Below the pieces are notes generated by a model that saw only the letters and a list, made by a program, of their open reading frames with translations, was not told where the DNA came from and ran no database searches. Of a stretch of DNA of 64,000 bases, positions 19,020 through 41,702 are shown in pieces; positions within the stretch are counted from its first letter, which is position 1; the number at the start of each line of letters is the position of its first letter. The stretch covers positions 1-64,000 of IMG/VR virus record IMGVR_UViG_3300045974_000132, one strand, 5' to 3'. A program made the translations under genes and the position numbers.

Positions 19020-19494
19020 TGCTTTAGTCTTAGACTTCGACGGTGCTCTATTCCCACGAAGATTCTTTTTAACTCCGACGGGTGCTGATCCTGTATTGGT
19101 ACAAGTAATAAATACATTGTGCCAACACTATGATTTCCGAATCGTTATCTCAGCAGGCATGCAAGAACAAGGTATAGATAAGTGTAAAGAAGAGTTAAGC
19201 AAAGCAGGTATTAGTGCAGACTATGTTATGCCTAATAACTGGTCGACTCTAAGCGTAGGCTTTCATATACGCGACCGATACAAGCAGGTTGAACGCTGGT
19301 ACGATCAGTATAAAGATTCAATTGGTAGGATGTTGATCTTTGATGATGAACATTGCCCATTCCAATCGCCTATAGCTGCTTACTGGATGAGGTGTGATGA
19401 AGAACACGGATTACGCTTATTCGATCTTACTACTCTGTACGGTGAATACTCAAAATTAATGGAACATAAAGAAGACATAAATGAAAACAAGTGA
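18988..19494 (+). CDS. HAD-superfamily phosphatase (HAD_SAK-like)
   Basis: Motif I LVLDFDGAL, motif II FRIVISAG, motif IV MLIFDDE; ATAGGA RBS. Confidence 0.75.
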   Translation: MAAIPPKTKYNALVLDFDGALFPRRFFLTPTGADPVLVQVINTLCQHYDFRIVISAGMQEQGIDKCKEELSKAGISADYVMPNNWSTLSVGFHIRDRYKQVERWYDQYKDSIGRMLIFDDEHCPFQSPIAAYWMRCDEEHGLRLFDLTTLYGEYSKLMEHKEDINENK

Positions 19495-20143
19495 TATTGT
19501 AAGGCAGCGTATTCTGGAAGCTAATGCTCCTTTCTTTGCAAATGACAACATCGCAAGCTTTGTAACGCCCGAAGAGTTGGCTGGTATTCAAGAAGAAGTT
19601 GAATTTCATATGGACAATCTACTTCGAGCTTTGGTAATCGACGTTGATAACGACCATAACTCGAACGGAACTGCCAAGCGCGTAGCAAAGATGTTTGTGC
19701 GCGAGTTCTACAAAGGCCGTTACGTTGAAATGCCTAACGTTACTGTCTTTCCTAATGCTAAGAAGATTGACCAACTGTATATCGTTGGCCCTGTTAGCGT
19801 TAAGAGTACGTGCAGCCATCATCTAGTACCTATCGTAGGTAAGGTATGGGTCGGTTGCATTCCGGGCGACGATCTAAGCGGCTTATCGAAGTTTGCTCGT
19901 TTAGCTGAATGGATTTTTCGTCGTCCTCAAATTCAAGAAGAAGCTACCCAACAGTTGGCAGAACTTCTTGAAGAGATTCTCAAGCCTAAAGCTTTAGCTC
20001 TCATTGTCAAAGCACAACATATGTGTATGTGCCATCGTGGTGTAGAAGACCCGGACAGTGAGCATACAACCAGTTACATGGGTGGTGCCTTTAAGCAAGA
20101 TCCGGCACTGCGTATGGAATTCTTGACACTGATGAACAAATGA
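19481..20143 (+). CDS. folE: GTP cyclohydrolase I
   Basis: TAKRVAKMF, VKSTCSHHLVPIVG, GLSKFARL...RRPQIQEEAT, AQHMCMCHRGV (Zn ligands intact). Confidence 0.95.
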   Translation: MKTSDIVRQRILEANAPFFANDNIASFVTPEELAGIQEEVEFHMDNLLRALVIDVDNDHNSNGTAKRVAKMFVREFYKGRYVEMPNVTVFPNAKKIDQLYIVGPVSVKSTCSHHLVPIVGKVWVGCIPGDDLSGLSKFARLAEWIFRRPQIQEEATQQLAELLEEILKPKALALIVKAQHMCMCHRGVEDPDSEHTTSYMGGAFKQDPALRMEFLTLMNK

Positions 20144-21075
20144 TTAGCACACTCACACTGCCGTATTTGACTTGTATTGACCATGCTTACGTGGATGATA
20201 TTGGACGTATTCGTGGTCGTTCATACCATGCTTCCTTCACAGTATCGGGTAAGGTTGATGAAGAAGGTGAGAAGGTTGTTGTAGACTTCTCTAAGGTAAA
20301 GAAGCTCATTAAGTCGATTGTCGATGACCATGAGTACGGATTCGACCACAAGCTTTGGGTTGATTCTAATTGCAAAGAAGATGCAAACCCTAGAATTGCT
20401 ACACCCTTTGCACTTCTAAATATTCCAGAGAATGCAATACGCTCTTTCCCTAAAGCTACACATGTACATGCTTCTTCGGCGTGTTTTATCATAGCCCAGC
20501 ATGTACAGGATGTTCTGCTAAATGTTCACGGTATTGAGGTAGACATTAAGTGTGCCCTAAATACCAGCCCTCTGTTTATTCAAGCAGGTGGTGTCTACGG
20601 AATGTTTAGCTACGTTCATGGCCTGCGCGATAGTTCAGCATACGGTTGTCAGAATCTAGCACATGGACATCTTAGTTATCTGCAATTGATTCCTAAGGTG
20701 GACATTATTCGCATGGTCGTTGATCCTGTTCATTGTGCTGATGAAGATAATGCTTTAACAGCCCTTGATAAAGTATGCAATGAAATCTGCAAAGACCTGG
20801 ACGATACGATTTTCATATACGGTGCTAATGTTTGGACAGCAAGCACTGACGAGGTGTCTATTGCTTATACTTCCAAGTCACGCGGATCTATGGGCGGTAA
20901 GTTCAAGAATAACGAGCGTCAAAAGACGGTAGTTCTTGAAACAGAAACTACTGTTGAATACCTTGCAGAATATATCAATGCTAAGTATGGTGAGCTTTTA
21001 CGTGAAGCCGGCGTTGATAAGTTTATCGTAAGTGAGGGCCTTTCTAAGGGTGTTCTGTTTGAAGTAACGTCTTAA
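20140..21075 (+). CDS. queD: QueD-like 6-carboxytetrahydropterin synthase, tandem T-fold type
   Basis: IDHAY...RGRSY.ASFTVSG...VVDFSKVKK.IK...DHKL and a second half FSYVHGL....YGCQNLAHGH; translationally coupled to folE (ATGA). Confidence 0.75.
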   Translation: MISTLTLPYLTCIDHAYVDDIGRIRGRSYHASFTVSGKVDEEGEKVVVDFSKVKKLIKSIVDDHEYGFDHKLWVDSNCKEDANPRIATPFALLNIPENAIRSFPKATHVHASSACFIIAQHVQDVLLNVHGIEVDIKCALNTSPLFIQAGGVYGMFSYVHGLRDSSAYGCQNLAHGHLSYLQLIPKVDIIRMVVDPVHCADEDNALTALDKVCNEICKDLDDTIFIYGANVWTASTDEVSIAYTSKSRGSMGGKFKNNERQKTVVLETETTVEYLAEYINAKYGELLREAGVDKFIVSEGLSKGVLFEVTS

Positions 21076-21633: not shown

Positions 21634-22189
21634 CAAACATTACGGTCTAATTGGGGCCCACCGCGTAGGTAAGACGACTTCTGCTCAGAAGTTTGCAGTA
21701 TCACCTCATATAGCCTACTTACAGATTGATACCAATGCAATCTTTGTAGAGCTTGGCTTCAATCCTAAAGATCAATACGATATTGAAACACGATTGACCA
21801 TCCAAGAGCAATTGATTGAGCGTGTAGAACCTCAGTATCGGGATAACAGTTGCAGCATAACAGATCGTACTCCGATAGACTTCTTGATCTACATGCTTGC
21901 GGATGTTACGCGTGACTTTCCTTCACGCTTGGAAGAACGTTTTGCTGCATATCAAAAGCGGTGCATTGATATGTACTTCCAGTACTTCCAACGAGGTTGT
22001 GTTATACAGCCAGGTATCCCGATAATTGATGTTGCAAAGTCGGCTCCACCTAGTGTTGCTTACATAGCACACCTAAATCATATCGCTGTTGGGCTGGCTA
22101 ACGCTCTCAACATTGATGTAATGCCGATTCATATTCTTGATCTTGAAGAACGTGATGAATATCTAACTGCAATCTTTCTTCCTTATTAA
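21626..22189 (+). CDS. P-loop nucleotide kinase-like protein (dNMP kinase/AAA_28-like)
   Basis: YGLIGAHRVGKTT Walker A; ITDRTPIDFLIY (DR motif of dNMP/TMP kinases). Confidence 0.75.
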   Translation: MDNKHYGLIGAHRVGKTTSAQKFAVSPHIAYLQIDTNAIFVELGFNPKDQYDIETRLTIQEQLIERVEPQYRDNSCSITDRTPIDFLIYMLADVTRDFPSRLEERFAAYQKRCIDMYFQYFQRGCVIQPGIPIIDVAKSAPPSVAYIAHLNHIAVGLANALNIDVMPIHILDLEERDEYLTAIFLPY

Positions 22190-22191
22190 AA

Positions 22192-22422
22192 ATGCCCAAT
22201 ACAAATACTGCGGAAGTTCAAGTCCAAACGAAACTGGATCGTTTGAATAAGCTATTGCGTAATCCTAAGTTGAAGCTCCCGTCTTTTCGACAGGAAGTAT
22301 CTTCATCTTTTGGTAATCTACACTGGCTCAAGGCAAAGCTCCCTAAGAATCCAGACTGCGATACTGAGTTGAAAGCTTTGCTCAATCTTGATCCTAAGTC
22401 ATTGCTTGAACCTATCAATTAA
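22192..22422 (+). CDS. Hypothetical protein
   Basis: 76 aa ORF in operon. Confidence 0.55.
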   Translation: MPNTNTAEVQVQTKLDRLNKLLRNPKLKLPSFRQEVSSSFGNLHWLKAKLPKNPDCDTELKALLNLDPKSLLEPIN

Positions 22423-22432
22423 GGTGTAATGT

Positions 22433-22738
22433 ATGTGTGCGTTTCGTCGAGCAGGTCCGCCAAAAGTTAAAACGGTCTCTAAGATCAGACGCACACGTAC
22501 CCAAGCCTATGGTAGTAATTGGGACGCAACTAGCGCACAAACAATTAGTTTAGCGGGACATCGGTGTAGTCGATGCGGTACTGCTGGTAGTAAGACTAAC
22601 AAACTACGGGCACACCATGTAATTCAAGTGTCTAAGGGTGGAAAGACAATACCCTTTTATTTGAAATGCCTGTGCGATAACTGCCATGAACTTCAACCTG
22701 GGCATGGACATCTAAGAGAAAGAAGATTAAAGAAATGA
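22433..22738 (+). CDS. Small Zn-binding HNH endonuclease
   Basis: HRCSRCG...AHHVIQVSKGG.....LKCLCDNCH; the usual Asn before LxxLC is Tyr here. Confidence 0.8.
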   Translation: MCAFRRAGPPKVKTVSKIRRTRTQAYGSNWDATSAQTISLAGHRCSRCGTAGSKTNKLRAHHVIQVSKGGKTIPFYLKCLCDNCHELQPGHGHLRERRLKK

Positions 22739-23043
22739 TAAGCAAGAAACATACACTGCTAACCCTTAAAGCCCTAGCTGTTTGTAAGCCCACATACCGT
22801 GAAGCCCATCAAAGCTTACGGGCTATATCTAAGCTGTGCAACATTGAGGGTGCCACCGGAGAGCTTAAAGTACGAGGAGCTTTAGAGAATCATGTTAAAG
22901 CTCGACGTATGGAACGAGTTACTGACCGGATTACTGATAAGTTTGCATACCGTATTACCCAACAAGGGTTGGATTACATAGAAACAAACAACCTTGAAGC
23001 GTATATTGCGGAGCAAGAAGAAGAGGCTGTTGAAAGTGTCTAA
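22735..23043 (+). CDS. Putative winged-helix DNA-binding protein
   Basis: VRGALENHVKARRMERV...YRITQQGLDYI is typical of a wHTH wing. Confidence 0.55.
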   Translation: MISKKHTLLTLKALAVCKPTYREAHQSLRAISKLCNIEGATGELKVRGALENHVKARRMERVTDRITDKFAYRITQQGLDYIETNNLEAYIAEQEEEAVESV

Positions 23044-23151
23044 ACTTTCTGAAAAATACTAATTTCAGGAAGTAGTCGGACACATCATACTCTTGTGAAT
23101 GCTCTGCGCGTGGTCATGCCGCGTTAGACCTTTAATTGTCACATAAAATTG

Positions 23152-23309
23152 GTGTACGGTGTAGTTGATGTTTCGACAAAAGGTGTCGGGCTTTTAGCCG
23201 GAACGCTCTACACAAGTTGTATACCCATTTTGTTGGGGAACAAAAAGTATGCAGCCGGGGCCTCATTGCAAAGTGAGGCCTTCGAGTGCTTATTTTAGTC
23301 CTCGTACAC
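23152..23309 (+). ncRNA. Candidate structured non-coding RNA or structured leader
   Basis: Nested stems: GTGTACG 23152-58 / CGTACAC 23303-09; GTGTAG 23159-64 / CTACAC 23208-13 enclosing CGACA/TGTCG and GGC/GCC; GTTGTATAC 23216-24 / GTATGCAGC 23247-55 enclosing TTTTGTT/AACAAAA; GGCCTCATT-GCAA-AGTGAGGCC 23259-80. Strand is assumed. Confidence 0.5.
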
Positions 23310-23331
23310 TTACAAGATAAAAGGTCACACT

Positions 23332-23559
23332 ATGGCAACAAAGAACTGCGGCAATTGCAAATACATCCATCTAATTGAAGGCCAAGCTTACCATGATTGC
23401 CGGGAAAGCTCTCCTACTGTTATTGTTCCTTCATTTAAACCCGGTGAAGGCAACCATGCAAAGAGTCAACTAGGTAAGATCATGACGGTATGGCCCCGAG
23501 TTTCAGAAACGGAAAAAGGCTGTGGCAAATTTGCAAGTAAAGAAAGCACAGAGGCCTAA
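23332..23559 (+). CDS. Small Cys-rich hypothetical protein
   Basis: NCGNCKY...CRESSP...WPRV....GCGKF; AAAGG RBS. Confidence 0.7.
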   Translation: MATKNCGNCKYIHLIEGQAYHDCRESSPTVIVPSFKPGEGNHAKSQLGKIMTVWPRVSETEKGCGKFASKESTEA

Positions 23560-23800
23560 GTATAAAGTGCGCGTCTATGTAAGTATTGTGCAGACAGTAC
23601 CGCATGACGAAGAGGGCAGGCTTTCAAAAGTAATTGAGCGGTTTACTGATCGTGTAATTGGAATTCGTAGGATTGTTATACAAGAGTTTGATGCTCTTGC
23701 TAAACGTTCTAGCAAAATACAAGGCTTTACAGACATAAAACTTCTTAATGGGAGTGTTCGGACAATCGCTACTGAGTTCCTTAAATTTAGGGAGCTATAA
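23522..23800 (+). CDS. Hypothetical protein (start uncertain)
   Basis: 92 aa basic ORF filling the gap. Confidence 0.5.
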   Translation: MANLQVKKAQRPKYKVRVYVSIVQTVPHDEEGRLSKVIERFTDRVIGIRRIVIQEFDALAKRSSKIQGFTDIKLLNGSVRTIATEFLKFREL

Positions 23801-23801
23801 T

Positions 23802-24122
23802 ATGGTAGAGGTCTTCAAAGGCCTTACGCAAGAATATAAAGAAATGCTGATGACTCGTTTTAATCCCGAGAGGATTGACGAAGAGTTTAGCCCACATGAA
23901 GTAAGGTTGATTATATTCTTTAACGATTCGCGGGACAGGCAGATTCATTCGCCGGATTTAAGATTTATTTTGTCTGCTCACTTTTCCAATTTTGGCTTTT
24001 TTATACCGTCAGGTAACTCCGTTCTTATTTCGTTTAGATTGAATCCTAAATTTAATAAGTATGATGAACAAGACCTTAGTAAAAAACTTAGTGGGAAAGG
24101 GGCGGGGTATTGTAGCAGTTAA
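23802..24122 (+). CDS. Hypothetical protein
   Basis: ATG at 23802 preceded by GGAG, in frame with the 23748 ORF. Confidence 0.55.
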   Translation: MVEVFKGLTQEYKEMLMTRFNPERIDEEFSPHEVRLIIFFNDSRDRQIHSPDLRFILSAHFSNFGFFIPSGNSVLISFRLNPKFNKYDEQDLSKKLSGKGAGYCSS

Positions 24123-24426
24123 ACGAATTGTAAAAGGCTCCTTGATTGAGTCTTGTCCGGTTGCTCTGTTCTCAGTACCCTTAGGCAGTACTCACATACT
24201 AGAGACATACGCCTTTAGGTGGTCAAAGAATAAAGTAGCTATTGCCTTAGGGAACGGTAGCTTATACAATCACAGTTATACACCCAATGCGGAATACACT
24301 AAAGATATAAAGAATAAGGTATTACTGGTGTATGCTTTAAGAACCATCCTACCGGGTGAAGAAATATGTTTCAACTACAACGGGCATCCAGATAATAAGG
24401 CACCGTTGTGGTTTAAAGTAAAATGA
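24061..24426 (+). CDS. SET-domain protein (putative lysine methyltransferase)
   Basis: GKGRGIVAVKRIVKGSLI, SLYNHSYTPNA, YALRTILPGEEICFNY: GxG, NHS and ELxFxY motifs all present. Confidence 0.9.
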   Translation: MMNKTLVKNLVGKGRGIVAVKRIVKGSLIESCPVALFSVPLGSTHILETYAFRWSKNKVAIALGNGSLYNHSYTPNAEYTKDIKNKVLLVYALRTILPGEEICFNYNGHPDNKAPLWFKVK

Positions 24427-24465
24427 TTATTGGAAGTGAGCGGACTATCTCCTCCGTTCGACATT

Positions 24466-24501
24466 AGAGCAGCCTCCTTAGTTGGACGCTGCTCTTTTTT
24501 T
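24466..24501 (+). terminator. Intrinsic terminator ending the replication block
   Basis: AGAGCAGC...GCTGCTCT 8-bp stem followed by a T run. Confidence 0.75.
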
Positions 24502-24579
24502 GTCCTTGATTTCGTGAAAACAATACAAATTCTAATTTATTGGTAGGGTTACTTATCTATATTCAAATGGAGAAACGTA

Positions 24580-26274
24580 ATGGGTCTTCCATCCTCCCCA
24601 GGTAGTTATGTGATAGAGCGTGATCTATCACAGCGAGTTCGTGCTGTATCCACATCAATCGGTGCTATCGTCGGAGCCTCCAAGAAGGGCCCGATAATGA
24701 CACCTACACTGGTTACAAACAAACAAGAATTTATTGAGACATTCGGACCTCCCGATTGGCGTTTTAGCTTGATGCACTATGCGGCTCTAAAGTTTCTTGA
24801 GAATAGTAGCCAGCTATTAGTTACACGGGTCATCAATGATGATACCAATCACGGCCCTGTGCCGTTAACAGCCGGAGCTTTCTACTCTGTAGATTCAGTT
24901 ACGGCTGTAGCACCGCGTCCTACTCTGTCAGTATTTGACGATGCTAACGGTAATACTCTGGGTAAGTTTGATCCGTTCAATACGTATTCATTCAACCCAA
25001 ATCAACCGGGTATTGCAAACGTCTTATTCTTCATATGTGCTGTCGATCCGGGTGACTGGAATAACACTCTATACATTGAAGTACGCCCAGCTTACAAGGC
25101 AGGCTTGTCTTCATTCGATGAAACATATGATGATCCGTATTCATTCTGGATTGATGTATATGTTAATCATGACAACCCGCGTGATAAGCCTGTTGAGTCA
25201 TGGCTTGTAAAGCGCAACTCAGAGATTAACGGTTTCGGCAATCAGATGTTCATGGAAGATGTTATCAATAAAGCTTCCAAGTATATTCGTGTTCGCAATA
25301 ATGAGTTTGCTCCTACAACTGTTAAGGTTGTAGAACCTGCTAAGGTATTCCTTGAAGGTGGCACTAACGGTCACTATCTAGCTTTCGGTCAAGTAATGAG
25401 AGCATGGGATCTTTATAAGGATACTGAGCATATCAATGTCAATATCTTGATTCAAGGTGGTGCTCCGATCGGCATGAGCAACTTGCAAGATATTTGCGAC
25501 ATCCAACGTAAAATGGCAATCATTGCTGAAGAACGTATGGATGCTGTTGCGATTCTTGACATCCCTTCACCGGAACAAGAAACTGCCCGTGCTGTTGCAT
25601 ATGCTGTTCAAGAGCTAAACCTTGATAGTAGCTATGCTGCCATCTATACTTGTGACATACGAGTACCGGATGTGTACAACGACATGGAAGTCTGGGTTCC
25701 GCCTTCTGGTTATGTTGCTGCAAACTGTGCATTGACTGACGAACAATATGAAGTCTGGTTCTCACCGGCTGGTATGTATCGTGGTCGCATGGATGAAGTC
25801 AACAAATCAAAATACATTTACAACCAAGGTCATCGAGACGCCCTCGACTACGTAAATGTTAACGCTATTCGTTATTTCCCTAAAGGCCAAGGCTGGCGTA
25901 TTTGGGGATCGAATACCCTACAGAGTATGGCGTCTGCTCTGTCGGATCTGAATGTTCGTCGTCTGATGAACTTCATTGAAAAGTCCGTACGCATTGCCAA
26001 TATGTATAGCGTGTTTGACCCGAATGACCAAATTCTTCGTAGTCGGGTTACATCAATCATTGAACGTTTCTTATCTCCAATTAAGAACGCCGGTGGTCTA
26101 TATTGGTTCCAAGTTATTTGTGATGACAGCAATAACACAAGCGACACCATTGCAGCAGGCATTCTTGTTATTGATGCTTACTTCGATCCCGTTATTACTG
26201 CAAAACGAATTCATCTTCGTGCCAACTTAATGGCAACCGGCGCTGACTTTAAGTCCTATCTTATCAATAAATAA
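24580..26274 (+). CDS. Contractile tail sheath protein (T4 gp18-like)
   Basis: SPGSYVIERDLS, GAIVGASKKGP...LVTNK.EF.ETFG.P, WVPPSG.VAA, WFSPAG..RG, NVRRLMNFIEK, FQVICDDSNNT; GGAG RBS. Confidence 0.93.
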   Translation: MGLPSSPGSYVIERDLSQRVRAVSTSIGAIVGASKKGPIMTPTLVTNKQEFIETFGPPDWRFSLMHYAALKFLENSSQLLVTRVINDDTNHGPVPLTAGAFYSVDSVTAVAPRPTLSVFDDANGNTLGKFDPFNTYSFNPNQPGIANVLFFICAVDPGDWNNTLYIEVRPAYKAGLSSFDETYDDPYSFWIDVYVNHDNPRDKPVESWLVKRNSEINGFGNQMFMEDVINKASKYIRVRNNEFAPTTVKVVEPAKVFLEGGTNGHYLAFGQVMRAWDLYKDTEHINVNILIQGGAPIGMSNLQDICDIQRKMAIIAEERMDAVAILDIPSPEQETARAVAYAVQELNLDSSYAAIYTCDIRVPDVYNDMEVWVPPSGYVAANCALTDEQYEVWFSPAGMYRGRMDEVNKSKYIYNQGHRDALDYVNVNAIRYFPKGQGWRIWGSNTLQSMASALSDLNVRRLMNFIEKSVRIANMYSVFDPNDQILRSRVTSIIERFLSPIKNAGGLYWFQVICDDSNNTSDTIAAGILVIDAYFDPVITAKRIHLRANLMATGADFKSYLINK

Positions 26275-28333: not shown

Positions 28334-31219
28334 ATGCCTATTGCAATTGCCTCTTATTTCATCCCACGCGCAGGTAATAGCTACGCTCTGATGGAAGACG
28401 TATATATTAAGGGCGGCTTCCGTATCGTATCAGACGTTAATGCGCGTAACGCTATTGATGCGTCTGCTCTTAAAGAAGGTATGTGGGTTGTTACTCGTGT
28501 GGATGGTAAAGTCTATACACTAGGTAGCGATCTTGTAACATGGACTGAAAAGTCCTTTGCTGGTAATATTGGTCCTGTAGGTCCCACTGGCCTTCAAGGG
28601 GTTGCGGGTACTCAAGGCCTACCTGGCGTTGCTGGACCGATGGGACCTACTGGTTACACTGGTCAGCAAGGCTACACGGGTGCTCAAGGTAATACTGGGC
28701 CCGTCGGCCCCACTGGTACTACAGGAACTACTGGTAGCACTGGACCCGTCGGTCCTACAGGTGCTCAAGGGGCAACTGGTGCCAATGGTTATACTGGTCC
28801 CGTCGGGCCTACGGGTTCCGGCGGCCCTCAGGGGGCAACTGGTTCTCAGGGTGACTTAGGTCCGATTGGTCCCACAGGTAGTCAGGGTATCAAGGGTGAC
28901 ACTGGCTCAACAGGCAGTACTGGACCCGTCGGTCCTACTGGTATCCAAGGTGACTTAGGCCCTGTTGGACCTACTGGTCTTCAAGGCAGTACAGGCTTAA
29001 CGGGTTCTCCTGGAGATACAGGTCCTGTCGGTCCTACTGGCTTTCAGGGTGATACAGGTCCCGTTGGTCCTACTGGATTCCAAGGCGTCCAAGGCAATCT
29101 AGGGCCTGTCGGGCCTACTGGCCCACAGGGTGTTCAAGGTATCCAAGGTAATGCTGGTGTTGTCGGAGATACAGGTCCGATTGGTCCCACAGGTATCCAA
29201 GGTGAATTAGGTCCCGTTGGGCCTACTGGTACTCAGGGTATCAAGGGTGACTTAGGGGATGCTGGCCCTGTTGGTCCTACTGGCGCAACTGGTGCTAAGG
29301 GTGACTCAGGCACGGGTATAGTCTATCAAGGCATATGGGCTGCAGGTGAGTATGCTGCTGACTCTTCTGTTCTGGCCCCATCTAGTGCTAATCCTGCTGT
29401 AAACTCTATCTGGATTTTAGCTAGTGCAAGTTCATACAACTCTACCTTAGAGCCTTCTTCTGATCTTACTCATTGGGTTGAATATACTTCTGTTCAAGGC
29501 CCAGCTGGTGTAGACGGTGCACCTGGCGTTGCTGGTCCTGTAGGCCCTACAGGGGTTGCTGGATCTGTTGGCGCAACTGGTTCAACTGGACCCGTCGGTC
29601 CTACTGGTCTTCAAGGCTTAACAGGTCCCGTTGGTCCTACTGGAGCTATAGGTCTTCAAGGTGTCCAGGGTGTTCAAGGTATTGATGGTCCTGTCGGTCC
29701 TACTGGTAGTGAAGGTACTCAAGGTAGTACTGGCCCAATTGGACCTACGGGTACTCAAGGTGCAACAGGCAGCACTGGTAGTGTAGGGCCCGTCGGACCC
29801 ACCGGACAACAAGGTACTACAGGCCTAACCGGTCCTGTCGGTCCTACTGGTGTTCAAGGCAATATCGGTCTTACAGGAACTACTGGTGATACAGGCCCGA
29901 TCGGCCCGACAGGCCCACAGGGTGCCACTGGGCCTGCTGGCCCCACAGGAGTTCAGGGTAATACAGGTATCCAAGGTGTCGTCGGCCCCGTTGGGCCTAC
30001 TGGTGTTCAAGGCACTGCTGGTGATGTCGGTCCTGTTGGACCTACTGGTAGCATAGGTCTTACTGGACCAGTCGGACCCACAGGTGTTCAAGGCGTTGCA
30101 GGTACTGACGGCTTAACAGGTCCCGTTGGTCCTACTGGTACGCAAGGTAGTACGGGTGTTGCAGGGCCCGTTGGCCCAACAGGTGTTGCAGGATCCGCTG
30201 GCCCTGTGGGTCCCACAGGTGTTCAAGGTAGTACAGGGGTTACTGGTAGTGTCGGTCCTGTTGGACCTACTGGTAATGCTGGAGCAGCAGGCTCAACTGG
30301 CCCCGTAGGACCAACTGGCGTCGCAGGTAGCCTAGGTCCTGTAGGCCCAACAGGTAGTCAGGGTGTTGCAGGTACTACTGGAACTACAGGTAGTACTGGA
30401 CCAGTAGGCCCAACAGGCGTTGCTGGTTCAACTGGCCCTGTTGGACCTACTGGTCTTCAAGGCCTTGCTGGTAGTACTGGTCCCGTCGGCCCTACAGGCC
30501 TTCAAGGAACCACAGGTAATACGGGTGCCACTGGTAATACGGGGCCTGTAGGTCCTACTGGAAACACAGGTAGTATCGGTTTAACAGGTCCTGTAGGTCC
30601 CACTGGCACTCAAGGTGCTACGGGTACTACAGGTAGCGTTGGCCCCGCTGGACCTACAGGCCCACAGGGTACTTCTTCTTTGTGGCGTGAAGGTGCTGTT
30701 GTTCCTGCAAGCGGCTTAGGTGTTGACAACGATCTATACTTGAATACTGCAACTTCTGACGTATATCAGAAGCAATCAGGTGCTTGGGCATTGGTCGCAA
30801 ACATTAAGGGTGCTCAGGGTGCTAGTTATGATCCTAACACTACTATCTTGTCACTGCCCTACGACATTTCGATGTTCGTCTATGGTAACATGGATGCTGC
30901 TAGTACAACTGTTGCTGAGTTTGTTGCACCGCGTAAGATTTCGTTGAAACAGAACTTAACAGGAAGCTTGGCTTACGCGAAGTCTGCCCCGTCGAATTCT
31001 GTCTCATACGCAATCAATGTTAACGGTGTCAATAAGGGTAGCGTAAACTTCGGTATCGGTTCTACTATAGGTACTTTCACATGGGCAACAGGCTTAAACT
31101 TGCTAGTGGGTGATCTCCTTGAAATCGTTACTCCTGCTTCAGTAGAACCTGCTATCGCAAACGTAACAATTTGTTTAGTGGGTGTAGCACAAGCTCCTAA
31201 CACTGCCATGCTTCCTTAA
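28334..31219 (+). CDS. Collagen-like (Gly-X-Y) fibre protein
   Basis: Two long Gly-X-Y tracts (about 28562-29317 and 29498-30672) dominated by GPVGPTG, flanked by globular N- and C-terminal domains. Confidence 0.9.
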
Positions 31220-41659: not shown

Positions 41660-41702
41660 TTATTTCTAATTTAAGTCTACGCTATTGATCTCGGAGATTC
41701 AA

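What the first reader, a model, noticed from the sequence alone, without database searches (positions are those of the whole stretch)
23152..23309. Densely base-paired ~160 nt element in the largest intergenic gap: candidate novel ncRNA
A closing stem (7 bp) encloses three arms: a 6-bp stem carrying two small hairpins, a long interrupted hairpin (9 bp + 7 bp, GGGG loop), and an 11-bp hairpin with a GCAA GNRA tetraloop. Several G-U pairs fit the + strand transcript, which points to RNA-level rather than DNA-level structure. It does not match tRNA or the preQ1 riboswitch pattern by eye. It ends 22 nt before the next ATG, so it may be a small RNA (for example a protein sponge or anti-defence RNA) or a regulatory leader.
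Basis: partly seen in the sequence, partly recalled or inferred. Interest (0 to 1): 0.7.

Follow-up and report, generated by a model that had tools for sequence, protein, structure and literature searches.

The report
Conserved structured leader RNA, jumbo phage
The flagged ~160-nt element is a real, evolutionarily conserved, four-helix folded RNA with no match to any known RNA family, sitting in the unusually long 5' leader of a small gene cassette (Cys4 protein plus SET methyltransferase) just before the tail-sheath gene of an uncultured freshwater jumbo phage; what it does is not yet known.

Summary
Window 23152-23309 (+) folds far better than shuffles (z -5.25). Nine distinct homologues from other metagenome assemblies keep the same arms through many compensatory changes: 91% of cells are paired against 30-52% in slid controls, and 34 of 51 pairs change on both sides. 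G-U pairs (59 cells against 8 A-C) and energies place the fold on the + strand RNA. Comparative data correct one detail: arm 1 is a single long hairpin with a conserved GUCGGG loop, not two small hairpins.

The element lies about 95 nt downstream of a phage promoter-like motif (TWCTAATTT). Of the motif's 16 genome copies, 15 are intergenic, and the others sit 16-81 nt before a gene. So this is a roughly 270-nt 5' leader of a 75-aa Cys4 gene and a SET-domain gene. The sister clade lacks both the element and the SET gene.

No Rfam family, tRNA or open reading frame explains it, and it occurs once in the 286-kb genome.

Four near-invariant segments can pair in two mutually exclusive ways (2:3, or 1:2 plus 3:4) at similar energy. 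My best guess, at modest confidence, is a cis-acting conformational switch of the riboswitch or attenuator type. No transcript data exist. It is a new RNA family of a known general kind.

The parts
23057..23065 (+). Phage promoter-like motif TACTAATTT (genome consensus TWCTAATTT, usually followed by A).
   Evidence: The genome holds 16 copies. 15 of them are intergenic and oriented towards the next gene; the other 14 lie 16-81 nt from its start. Only 6% of the genome is intergenic, giving P about 7e-18. The motif is nearly invariant at the same relative place in the homologues. That it is a promoter is an inference, with no transcript data.
23078..23090 (+). Conserved start of the leader (GGACACAUCAUAC), just after the presumed transcription start.
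   Evidence: Identical in six of the nine homologues. Its role is unknown.
23091..23140 (+). Variable part of the leader. It differs in length and sequence between homologues (about 50-110 nt).
   Evidence: Alignment A1.
23141..23159 (+). Segment S1, near-invariant (consensus AUAAAGUUGRUGUACGG). Its 3' part (23152-23158) is the 5' strand of the closing stem P1. Alternatively, GUACG (23154-23158) can pair with S2.
23159..23213 (+). Arm P2, a long interrupted hairpin. Outer stem 23159-23164 with 23208-23213. Middle stem 23170-23175 with 23199-23204. Inner stem 23178-23182 with 23191-23195. The apical loop 23183-23190 carries the conserved GUCGGG.
   Evidence: The outer stem is 98% paired with 5 of 6 pairs changed on both sides. 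The inner stem is 95% paired with 5 of 5 changed. It folds as the same hairpin in every homologue taken alone.
23214..23255 (+). AA linker plus arm P3. P3a (segment S2, GUUGURU.., with segment S3, ..AYGCAGC) is 23216-23224 with 23247-23255. P3b is 23228-23234 with 23239-23245, with the GGGG loop at 23235-23238.
   Evidence: P3a is 97.9% paired but mostly invariant, with two invariant U-G pairs. One position shows A-U, G-U and G-C. P3b is 90% paired with 6 of 7 pairs changed on both sides.
23256..23284 (+). Arm P4, directly abutting P3. It has a conserved base (CGG with YCG), a variable covarying stem, and the GCAA loop at 23268-23271.
   Evidence: 97% paired, with 8 of 12 pairs changed on both sides. 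RNAalifold also recovered it on a plain MAFFT alignment.
23285..23296 (+). Segment S4, conserved (RRUGYNUAUUU). It is single-stranded in the four-helix fold. Alternatively it pairs with S3 (AGUA.GCA) and so extends P4.
   Evidence: Invariant columns in A1. The alternative pairing is 97.6% paired, with changes on one side only.
23297..23309 (+). C/A-rich tail that holds the 3' strand of the closing stem P1 (23303-23309).
   Evidence: P1 is 76.7% paired with 3 pairs changed on both sides. Summed S1-tail duplex energy over the nine homologues gives z -3.1, p about 0.008 against shuffled tails.
23310..23334 (+). A-rich linker, Shine-Dalgarno AAAGG (23320-23324) and the ATG (23332) of the 75-aa gene.
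   Evidence: The Shine-Dalgarno sequence is not consistently paired in either fold.
23332..23559 (+). First gene of the cassette, a 75-aa protein with four invariant Cys. It served as the anchor for finding the homologous loci.
   Evidence: No Pfam or PHROG match. The AF2 model is poor, pLDDT 59.8. The Atlas search suggests HiPIP-like or BssC/TutF-like small Cys4 proteins, as a lead only.
24061..24426 (+). SET-domain (SAM-dependent methyltransferase) gene, the last gene of the cassette. It is present in every locus that has the RNA and absent from those that lack it.
   Evidence: Pfam PF00856, E 2.3e-14. Gene tables of the loci.
24530..24538 (+). Second copy of the promoter-like motif, 50 nt before the tail-sheath gene (24580-26274).

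Best explanation
**Shown.** The element is the core of a conserved, highly structured RNA read from the + strand. It has a closing stem P1 around three arms: P2 with a GUCGGG loop, P3, and P4, which abuts P3. About 45 invariant nucleotides are concentrated at the helix bases and in the joining strands.

**Shown by position, inferred as to transcription.** It lies between a phage promoter-like motif and the ribosome-binding site of a cassette made of a Cys4 protein gene and a SET methyltransferase gene. That makes it a roughly 270-nt 5' leader, where this phage's other such leaders are 16-81 nt.

**Inferred mechanism.** The leader acts in cis as a conformational switch.
- Four near-invariant segments (S1 to S4) can form either the four-helix fold or a mutually exclusive alternative.
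- In the four-helix fold, S2 pairs with S3 as the base of P3, and S1 pairs with the tail as P1.
- In the alternative, S1 pairs with S2 and S3 pairs with S4. This lengthens P4 into a hairpin that ends in a U-rich stretch.
- A ligand or protein that stabilises the junction would favour the four-helix fold and read-through into the cassette. The alternative would favour premature termination or decay.
- The phage encodes a sigma-70-family protein. This suggests host RNA polymerase transcribes these genes, so such attenuation is mechanistically possible.
For: **Fold**
- z -5.25 on the + strand.
- All nine homologues give z -2.8 to -6.2 on the + strand and are less stable on the - strand.

**Homology and covariation**
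- A covariance model built from the window sequence alone finds all ten other copies, at E 3e-24 to 2e-3, all at the same genomic position.
- On that alignment 91.4% of cells pair, against 30-52% when partners are slid by 1-3 columns. 34 of 51 pairs change on both sides, against 6-11 in the slid controls. None of 500 shuffles reached the observed values.
- RNAalifold on a structure-blind MAFFT alignment independently recovers the P2 base and P4 with compensatory changes.
- Each arm folds as the same hairpin in every homologue when folded alone.

**Strand and coding**
- 59 G-U cells against 8 A-C cells.
- No reading frame is open in all homologues.

**Leader position**
- Distribution of the promoter-like motif and its conservation upstream of every copy.
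- Sister-clade loci without the RNA have the motif 30-50 nt before the same gene.

**Switch**
- The alternative S1:S2 plus S3:S4 pairing is 97.6% paired, against 18-67% in slid controls.
- The four-helix pairs are 97.9% paired for P3a and 76.7% for P1.
- Constrained energies differ by only 1-7 kcal/mol. The four-helix fold is better in 6 of 9 sequences and the alternative in 3 of 9.

**Polymerase**
- A sigma-70 region-2 match lies in a 377-aa ORF of this genome.
- The related PaBG group also carries a phage sigma factor (PMC7412058, read).
Against: - There are no transcript data. No RNA run was listed, so the transcription start, the 3' end and any termination are all inferred.
- The alternative pairing rests on invariant or one-sided changes only, with no double compensatory change. 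It may partly reflect the sequence similarity between S1 and S2.
- The would-be terminator is atypical. It has a 2x2 internal loop near its base and only a modest U run, and the terminator scan found none here.
- The Shine-Dalgarno sequence is not sequestered in either fold.
- No ligand or binding protein has been identified.
- The link between the element and the SET gene is a single evolutionary event: the two clades split with 95/98 support.
- Only nine distinct sequences are available.
Confidence: 0.38

Rival explanations
1. It is a stable non-coding RNA that acts in trans, for example as a protein sponge or decoy or another trans-acting RNA. It is made from the strong phage promoter and released from the 5' end of the cassette transcript. 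The downstream genes merely share the promoter.
For: The compact closed fold (P1 around three arms) with many invariant junction nucleotides resembles stand-alone structured RNAs. No canonical expression platform is present: the scan found no terminator and the Shine-Dalgarno sequence is not sequestered. The sheath gene has its own copy of the promoter motif, so the upstream promoter is not needed for it.
Against: No terminator or conserved processing site marks a 3' end. The RNA is always placed directly before the same gene, in the same orientation, and occurs only once per genome. No RNA data are available.
Confidence: 0.2
2. It is a cis-acting leader that modifies RNA polymerase or protects the transcript. 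Either it gives processive antitermination in the manner of the HK022 put RNA, or it is a 5' stabiliser that lengthens the life of the late mRNA.
For: It is a promoter-proximal, nascent, highly folded RNA at the head of a run of same-strand late or structural genes transcribed (by inference) by host polymerase. HK022 putRNA is a precedent for a phage leader RNA that acts alone on the polymerase (PMC9378689, abstract seen). The lack of an expression platform fits this reading.
Against: There is no sequence or structural similarity to put, which has two hairpins and about 70 nt. The element starts about 75 nt from the presumed 5' end, so it is not a terminal protective hairpin. The sister clade expresses the same gene and the sheath without it. 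The sheath has its own promoter motif.
Confidence: 0.15
3. It is a self-cleaving ribozyme of a new class that trims the leader.
For: A multi-helix junction with conserved nucleotides concentrated at the junction and helix bases, in a phage context where small ribozymes are common (my own knowledge of the field, not tested here).
Against: No match to any ribozyme family in Rfam, even at E up to 10. No candidate cleavage site was identified. The data give nothing that distinguishes this from a ligand-binding fold.
Confidence: 0.08
4. It is a DNA-level element (origin, packaging site or cruciform) or a chance fold.
For: It lies in the largest gap of the window. The - strand also folds better than shuffles in the window copy, z -4.0.
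Against: The strands are strongly asymmetric. There are 59 G-U cells against 8 A-C cells. The - strand z is near 0 to -1.8 in five of the nine homologues, and the - strand is always less stable than the + strand. The stems change by compensatory substitution. The element sits downstream of a promoter motif and in the gene orientation.
Confidence: 0.03

Closest known systems
Riboswitches and attenuator leaders with a multi-helix junction aptamer (for example the four-way-junction SAM-I class, or the terminator-embedded HMP-PP/thiS class, PMC6478431)
   Same: A 5'-leader position. A closing helix around several arms. Invariant junction nucleotides with covarying stems. Mutually exclusive pairings that share a strand.
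   Different: No sequence or model match to any Rfam riboswitch at E up to 10. No canonical terminator and no Shine-Dalgarno sequestration. The ligand is unknown. The switch strands lie inside the conserved core rather than in a separate downstream platform.
HK022 put RNA and other cis-acting antitermination leaders (EAR, nut sites)
   Same: A phage-encoded, promoter-proximal folded RNA placed ahead of an operon that host RNA polymerase transcribes.
   Different: This element is about 2.5 times larger and is a four-helix junction rather than two hairpins. There is no sequence similarity. No terminators to be overridden have been identified downstream.
ToxI antitoxin RNA (RF02519), the only Rfam hit
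   Same: An 11-nt and a 6-nt stretch match the two ends of the 34-nt model.
   Different: 19.3 bits against a gathering score of 50, E 2.9. There is a single copy rather than tandem 36-nt repeats. The matched stretch is the S1 segment plus the start of P2. This is a chance match.
Structured stable RNAs of large phages (tRNA-like RNAs and tmRNA-like genes, also present in this genome at 153-174 kb)
   Same: Phage-encoded, highly structured, and non-coding.
   Different: ARAGORN does not recognise it. It lies far from the tRNA cluster. It sits in an mRNA leader rather than in an RNA gene array.

Membership tests
Any Rfam 15 family | Covariance-model score at or above the family's gathering threshold. 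| tested here: not met
   No match at gathering score in the whole window. With E up to 10 on 22000-24500 the only match was ToxI, at 19.3 bits.
ToxI (type III antitoxin RNA) | Tandem array of about 36-nt repeats next to a toxN gene, and a score of at least 50 bits. | tested here: not met
   19.3 bits, E 2.9. No tandem or direct repeats longer than 15 nt in 22900-23450. The neighbouring genes are an HNH gene, a 102-aa ORF and a 75-aa Cys4 ORF.
tRNA / tmRNA | Cloverleaf or tmRNA architecture recognised by ARAGORN. | tested here: not met
   No genes found in the window. The genome's 7 tRNAs and its tmRNA-like gene lie at 153-174 kb.
preQ1 riboswitches (classes I-III) | Match to RF00522, RF01054 or RF02680. 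This family was considered because FolE and QueD-like genes lie upstream. | tested here: not met
   No match at E up to 10. The FolE and QueD-like genes at 19481-21075 belong to the preceding gene block.
Riboswitch (general kind) | Conserved aptamer fold supported by covariation. | tested here: met
Riboswitch (general kind) | Location in the 5' untranslated leader of the regulated gene, in the same orientation, in all representatives. | tested here: met
   A promoter-like motif lies upstream and the Shine-Dalgarno sequence and ATG lie downstream in all nine copies. The transcription start is inferred, not measured.
Riboswitch (general kind) | Expression platform: a terminator/antiterminator pair, or Shine-Dalgarno sequestration coupled to the aptamer. 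| tested here: inconclusive
   Conserved mutually exclusive pairings exist. However, there is no canonical terminator and no consistent Shine-Dalgarno pairing.
Riboswitch (general kind) | Direct, selective ligand binding. | not testable with these tools
The RNA-protein job was not folded. Neither is evidence.
Intrinsic terminator | G+C-rich hairpin followed immediately by a U run. | tested here: not met
   No terminator-like sites in 22000-24500. After P4 come eight non-U-rich bases before UAUUUU.
Protein-coding gene (49-aa TTG ORF at 23149-23298) | A reading frame kept open in homologues. | tested here: not met
   Four of the nine homologues have stops in all six frames. No frame is open in all of them.

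The most novel reading that the evidence does not exclude
The RNA is the aptamer of a new riboswitch class, or less likely a new self-cleaving ribozyme, confined so far to a clade of uncultured freshwater jumbo phages. By sensing a metabolite it would gate expression of a Cys4 (possibly Fe-S) protein and a SET methyltransferase at the onset of tail-gene expression. SAM or SAH, suggested by the SET gene, and a 7-deazaguanine or pterin intermediate, suggested by the FolE and QueD-like genes upstream, are the obvious untested candidates.
Probability: 0.25. Interest if true: 0.8.

Novelty: new member of a known kind. Interest (0 to 1): 0.55.

Why it matters
Few structured RNAs in jumbo phages have been characterised, and phage leaders with multi-helix junctions and dozens of invariant nucleotides are rare. 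This one has comparative support good enough to justify bench work. If it binds a ligand, it would be a phage-specific riboswitch class tied to late-gene timing and to a SET methyltransferase. If it acts on RNA polymerase, it would be a second example of put-like regulation. In either case it gives a defined, testable RNA handle on gene regulation in an uncultured phage lineage distantly related to PaBG. The analysis also yields a likely promoter consensus for that lineage.

Tried and rejected
**Searches for more copies**
- DNA similarity to 50,697 phage records: no match. The 75-aa protein by tblastn: no match.
- Exact-pattern scan of IMG/VR with the two invariant blocks: 0 hits.
- The same idea on JGI metagenome contigs gave 11 hits, and on GTDB genomes 22 hits. 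All are chance matches lacking S1, S4 and the flanks. The family was therefore reachable only through the protein index.
- Model R1 on the complete PaBG and NCTB genomes and on two IMG/VR fragments of relatives: nothing. On the phage's own genome it finds only the one copy.

**Sequencing runs**
- Three pond DNA runs hold the phage but show no variants. They give no extra covariation and are not independent, and one may be the source sample.

**Pairings tested and not supported**
- Pseudoknots between the G-rich P3 or P2 loops and the C-rich tail looked attractive by eye (GGGG with CCCC, GGUGG with CCACC). They are not better than shuffled tails, p 0.23 and 0.34, so I dropped them.
- In the window, 23127-23136 can pair with the Shine-Dalgarno region at 23317-23326. 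This is not conserved in the homologues, so I rejected it as a mechanism.

**Other dead ends**
Neither is evidence.
- The AF2 model of the 75-aa protein is too poor (pLDDT 59.8) for a fold search.
- The first genome-wide z-score scan timed out. I replaced it with a regression of energy on composition.

Full report
**1. What the window is**

The window is the first 64 kb of a 286,393-bp IMG/VR virus record with direct terminal repeats, judged complete. It was assembled from pond metagenomes.

By tail-sheath protein, the nearest cultured phages are phage NCTB and Pseudomonas phage PaBG (about 43% identity) and Lu11 (37%).

Gene order around the finding is as follows:
- helicase
- HAD-domain protein
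- GTP cyclohydrolase I (19481-20143)
- QueD-like PTPS (20140-21075)
- AAA_28 protein
- HNH endonuclease (22433-22738)
- a 102-aa ORF (22735-23043)
- the 288-nt gap that holds the element
- a 75-aa Cys4 ORF (23332-23559)
- two small ORFs
- a SET-domain gene (24061-24426)
- the tail sheath (24580-26274)

**2.

- The + strand folds at -62.9 kcal/mol, z -5.25, with 0 of 200 shuffles as good.
- The - strand is 14.5 kcal/mol weaker, z -4.0.
- In a genome-wide scan of 14,312 windows of 160 nt, with energy regressed on composition, the element placed in register ranks about 19th.
- The few stronger loci include a collagen-repeat gene, the tmRNA-like gene and a leader hairpin.
- The gap is the largest in the window.

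**3. It is not a known RNA and not a gene**

- Rfam 15 gives nothing at gathering score in the window.
- At E up to 10 around the element, the only match is a chance hit to ToxI: 19.3 bits against a threshold of 50, E 2.9.
- ARAGORN finds no tRNA or tmRNA in the window.
- No terminator-like site is present.
- No reading frame stays open across the homologues.

**4. Homologues**

DNA searches of phage records and of IMG/VR found nothing. The 75-aa protein downstream has 11 relatives (59-86% identity) in the 5.8-billion-protein index.

Fetching their contigs, together with one IMG/VR relative, gave two kinds of locus.
- Nine distinct loci have a 270-360-nt gap upstream of the gene, and all of them carry a recognisable copy of the element. 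These are the window, L004, L005-7, L008, L009/10, L011/12, L013, L018 and L019-24.
- Four loci (L002, L014, L015, L016) have a short gap and no element.
- On a tree of the 75-aa protein the two groups are separate clades with 95/98 support.

Every locus with the element also has a SET-domain gene after the 75-aa gene. In the element-less loci that reach that far, the 75-aa gene is followed directly by the sheath. Because the two groups are separate clades, this co-occurrence is a single evolutionary event and only weak evidence for a functional link.

**5. Structure from comparison**

Conserved blocks alternate with variable hairpins:
- S1 (AUAAAGUUGRUGUACGG)
- P2
- AA
- P3, whose base is S2 (GUUGURU) paired with S3 (AYGCAGC)
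- P4, directly abutting P3, with the base CGG paired to YCG
- S4 (RRUGYNUAUUU)
- a C/A-rich tail
- the Shine-Dalgarno sequence

Each of P2, P3 and P4 folds as the same hairpin in every homologue when folded alone, although the stems differ in sequence.

RNAalifold on a plain MAFFT alignment already shows compensatory changes in the P2 base and in P4: 12 of 28 predicted pairs change on both sides.

A covariance model built from the window sequence alone (R1) finds all ten other copies, at E 3e-24 to 2e-3. It finds nothing in the element-less loci, no second copy in the phage's own genome, and nothing in PaBG or NCTB.

On the resulting alignment:
- 91.4% of cells pair, against 30-52% with partners slid by 1-3 columns.
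- 34 of 51 pairs change on both sides, against 6-11 in the slid controls.
- The covariation score is 0.50, against 0.05-0.10.
- None of 500 shuffles reached the observed values.

That alignment is fitted to the model, so the numbers lean towards the structure. The margin is nevertheless large, and the structure-blind results agree.

The closing stem P1 is weaker: 76.7% paired, with 3 pairs changed on both sides. S1-tail complementarity summed over the nine sequences still beats shuffled tails, z -3.1, p about 0.008.

The homologues keep one long interrupted hairpin whose apical loop carries (U)GUCGGG.

**6. Strand**

- Paired cells include 59 G-U cells against 8 A-C cells.
- In all nine homologues the + strand is more stable than the - strand, by 6.6 to 32.8 kcal/mol.
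- The + strand z-scores are -2.8 to -6.2.
- The functional fold therefore belongs to the + strand transcript.

**7. It is a leader**

About 95 nt upstream of S1 lies TACTAATTT (23057-23065), which is nearly invariant in all the homologues.

- In this genome TWCTAATTT occurs 16 times. That count is not above chance for so A+T-rich a word: 3 observed against 2.5 expected in the window.
- However, 15 of the 16 copies are intergenic and point at a gene start. Apart from the copy upstream of the element, those starts lie 16-81 nt downstream. Only 6% of the genome is intergenic, giving P about 7e-18.
- One copy sits 50 nt before the sheath gene.
- In the element-less relatives the motif lies 30-50 nt before the 75-aa gene.

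I therefore read the motif as a phage promoter. On that reading the element is the core of a leader of about 270 nt, the only long one among these promoters.

The genome encodes a sigma-70-family protein, as PaBG does (PMC7412058). Transcription by host polymerase with a phage sigma is a reasonable inference but is not shown.

**8. Alternative pairings**

RNAalifold preferred a different use of the invariant blocks. GUACG of S1 pairs with UGURU of S2, and AGUA.GCA of S3 pairs with UGY.UAUU of S4. This extends both P2 and P4, and it excludes P1 and the base of P3.

- On the alignment this alternative is 97.6% paired, against 18-67% in slid controls, but it shows only invariant or one-sided changes.
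- P3a is 97.9% paired, with one position running through A-U, G-U and G-C. P1 adds three positions with double changes.
- Constrained folding puts the two states within 1-7 kcal/mol. The four-helix state is better in six sequences and the alternative in three.

Segments that must satisfy two partners would be expected to be frozen in sequence, which is what S1 to S4 show. This is the classical 1:2/3:4 against 2:3 logic of attenuators.

The 3:4 hairpin is not a canonical terminator, however. The Shine-Dalgarno sequence is free in both states.

**9. Interpretation**

- Firmly supported: this is a new, conserved, structured RNA family on the + strand, in a promoter-proximal leader.
- Inferred at modest confidence (about 0.4): it works in cis as a ligand- or protein-responsive conformational switch.
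- Rivals: a stable RNA released from the leader; a put-like or stabilising leader (precedent PMC9378689); a ribozyme.
- A DNA-level element or a chance fold is essentially excluded.

**10. Limits**

- Only nine distinct sequences are available, all from one clade.
- There are no RNA data.
- The DNA runs carry the identical sequence.
- The host is unknown.
- The complex predictions could not be used.

Noticed in passing
window 23057-23065, 24530-24538, 41664-41672, and 13 more sites in the genome: The motif TWCTAATTT(A) behaves like a phage promoter. 15 of its 16 copies are intergenic and correctly oriented. 14 of them lie 16-81 nt before a gene start, and the 15th is the copy 275 nt before the ATG of the 75-aa gene. 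GTAG often follows about 8-12 nt downstream.
   Followed up: partly
window 28334-31219: A 961-aa ORF made almost entirely of collagen-like G-X-Y repeats, probably a tail-fibre-like protein. Its G+C-rich repeats (56-59% against 44% for the genome) account for the strongest 'structure' signals in the genome-wide scan. A 45-nt tandem repeat lies at 30415-30507.
   Followed up: partly
window 19481-21075: GTP cyclohydrolase I (E 4e-46) followed by a 311-aa protein with a QueD-like PTPS domain. This suggests a 7-deazaguanine or pterin pathway just upstream. The same pair is syntenic in phage NCTB and in several of the homologous loci.
   Followed up: partly
window 23332-23559: The 75-aa protein has four invariant Cys (C6, C9, C23, C64) and an invariant GKIMTVWPRV motif. 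The Atlas feature and structure search points to HiPIP-like or BssC/TutF-like small Cys4 subunits. This is a lead only, because the AF2 model is poor.
   Followed up: partly
window 23044-23073: An 11-bp inverted repeat brackets the promoter-like motif immediately after the stop codon of the 102-aa ORF. Similar short inverted repeats flank the motif in several homologues. No U run follows, so it is not a canonical terminator.
   Followed up: no
window 23127-23136 and 23317-23326; also 23175-23184: GACCUUUAAU is complementary to the Shine-Dalgarno region AUAAAAGGUC. A near-copy of the Shine-Dalgarno stretch lies inside P2. This is seen only in the window's own sequence and not in the homologues.
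   Followed up: yes
own genome (outside the window) 153.5-174.2 kb: ARAGORN finds seven tRNA genes and a permuted tmRNA-like gene (157215-157601, tag AANDASFRKAA), all on the - strand. Several of the genome's largest gaps lie in this region.
   Followed up: no
own genome (outside the window) about 95,700-95,784 (- strand): Another copy of the promoter motif is followed by an 81-nt leader made of one long, near-perfect hairpin. It is among the most stable windows in the genome. It is unrelated in sequence to the element studied here.
   Followed up: no
own genome (outside the window) 165,918-166,303: A 386-nt ORF-free gap that folds strongly on both strands, with a promoter-motif copy at 165,958 (- strand). 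It may hold another non-coding RNA.
   Followed up: no
window 22433-22738, and the upstream gene in most homologous loci: A small HNH endonuclease gene is conserved immediately upstream of the promoter in both the element-bearing and the element-less clades. It is therefore a resident gene, not a marker of a mobile insertion. The 102-aa ORF between it and the promoter has a counterpart (a 99-aa ORF) only in L005-7 among the fetched loci.
   Followed up: partly
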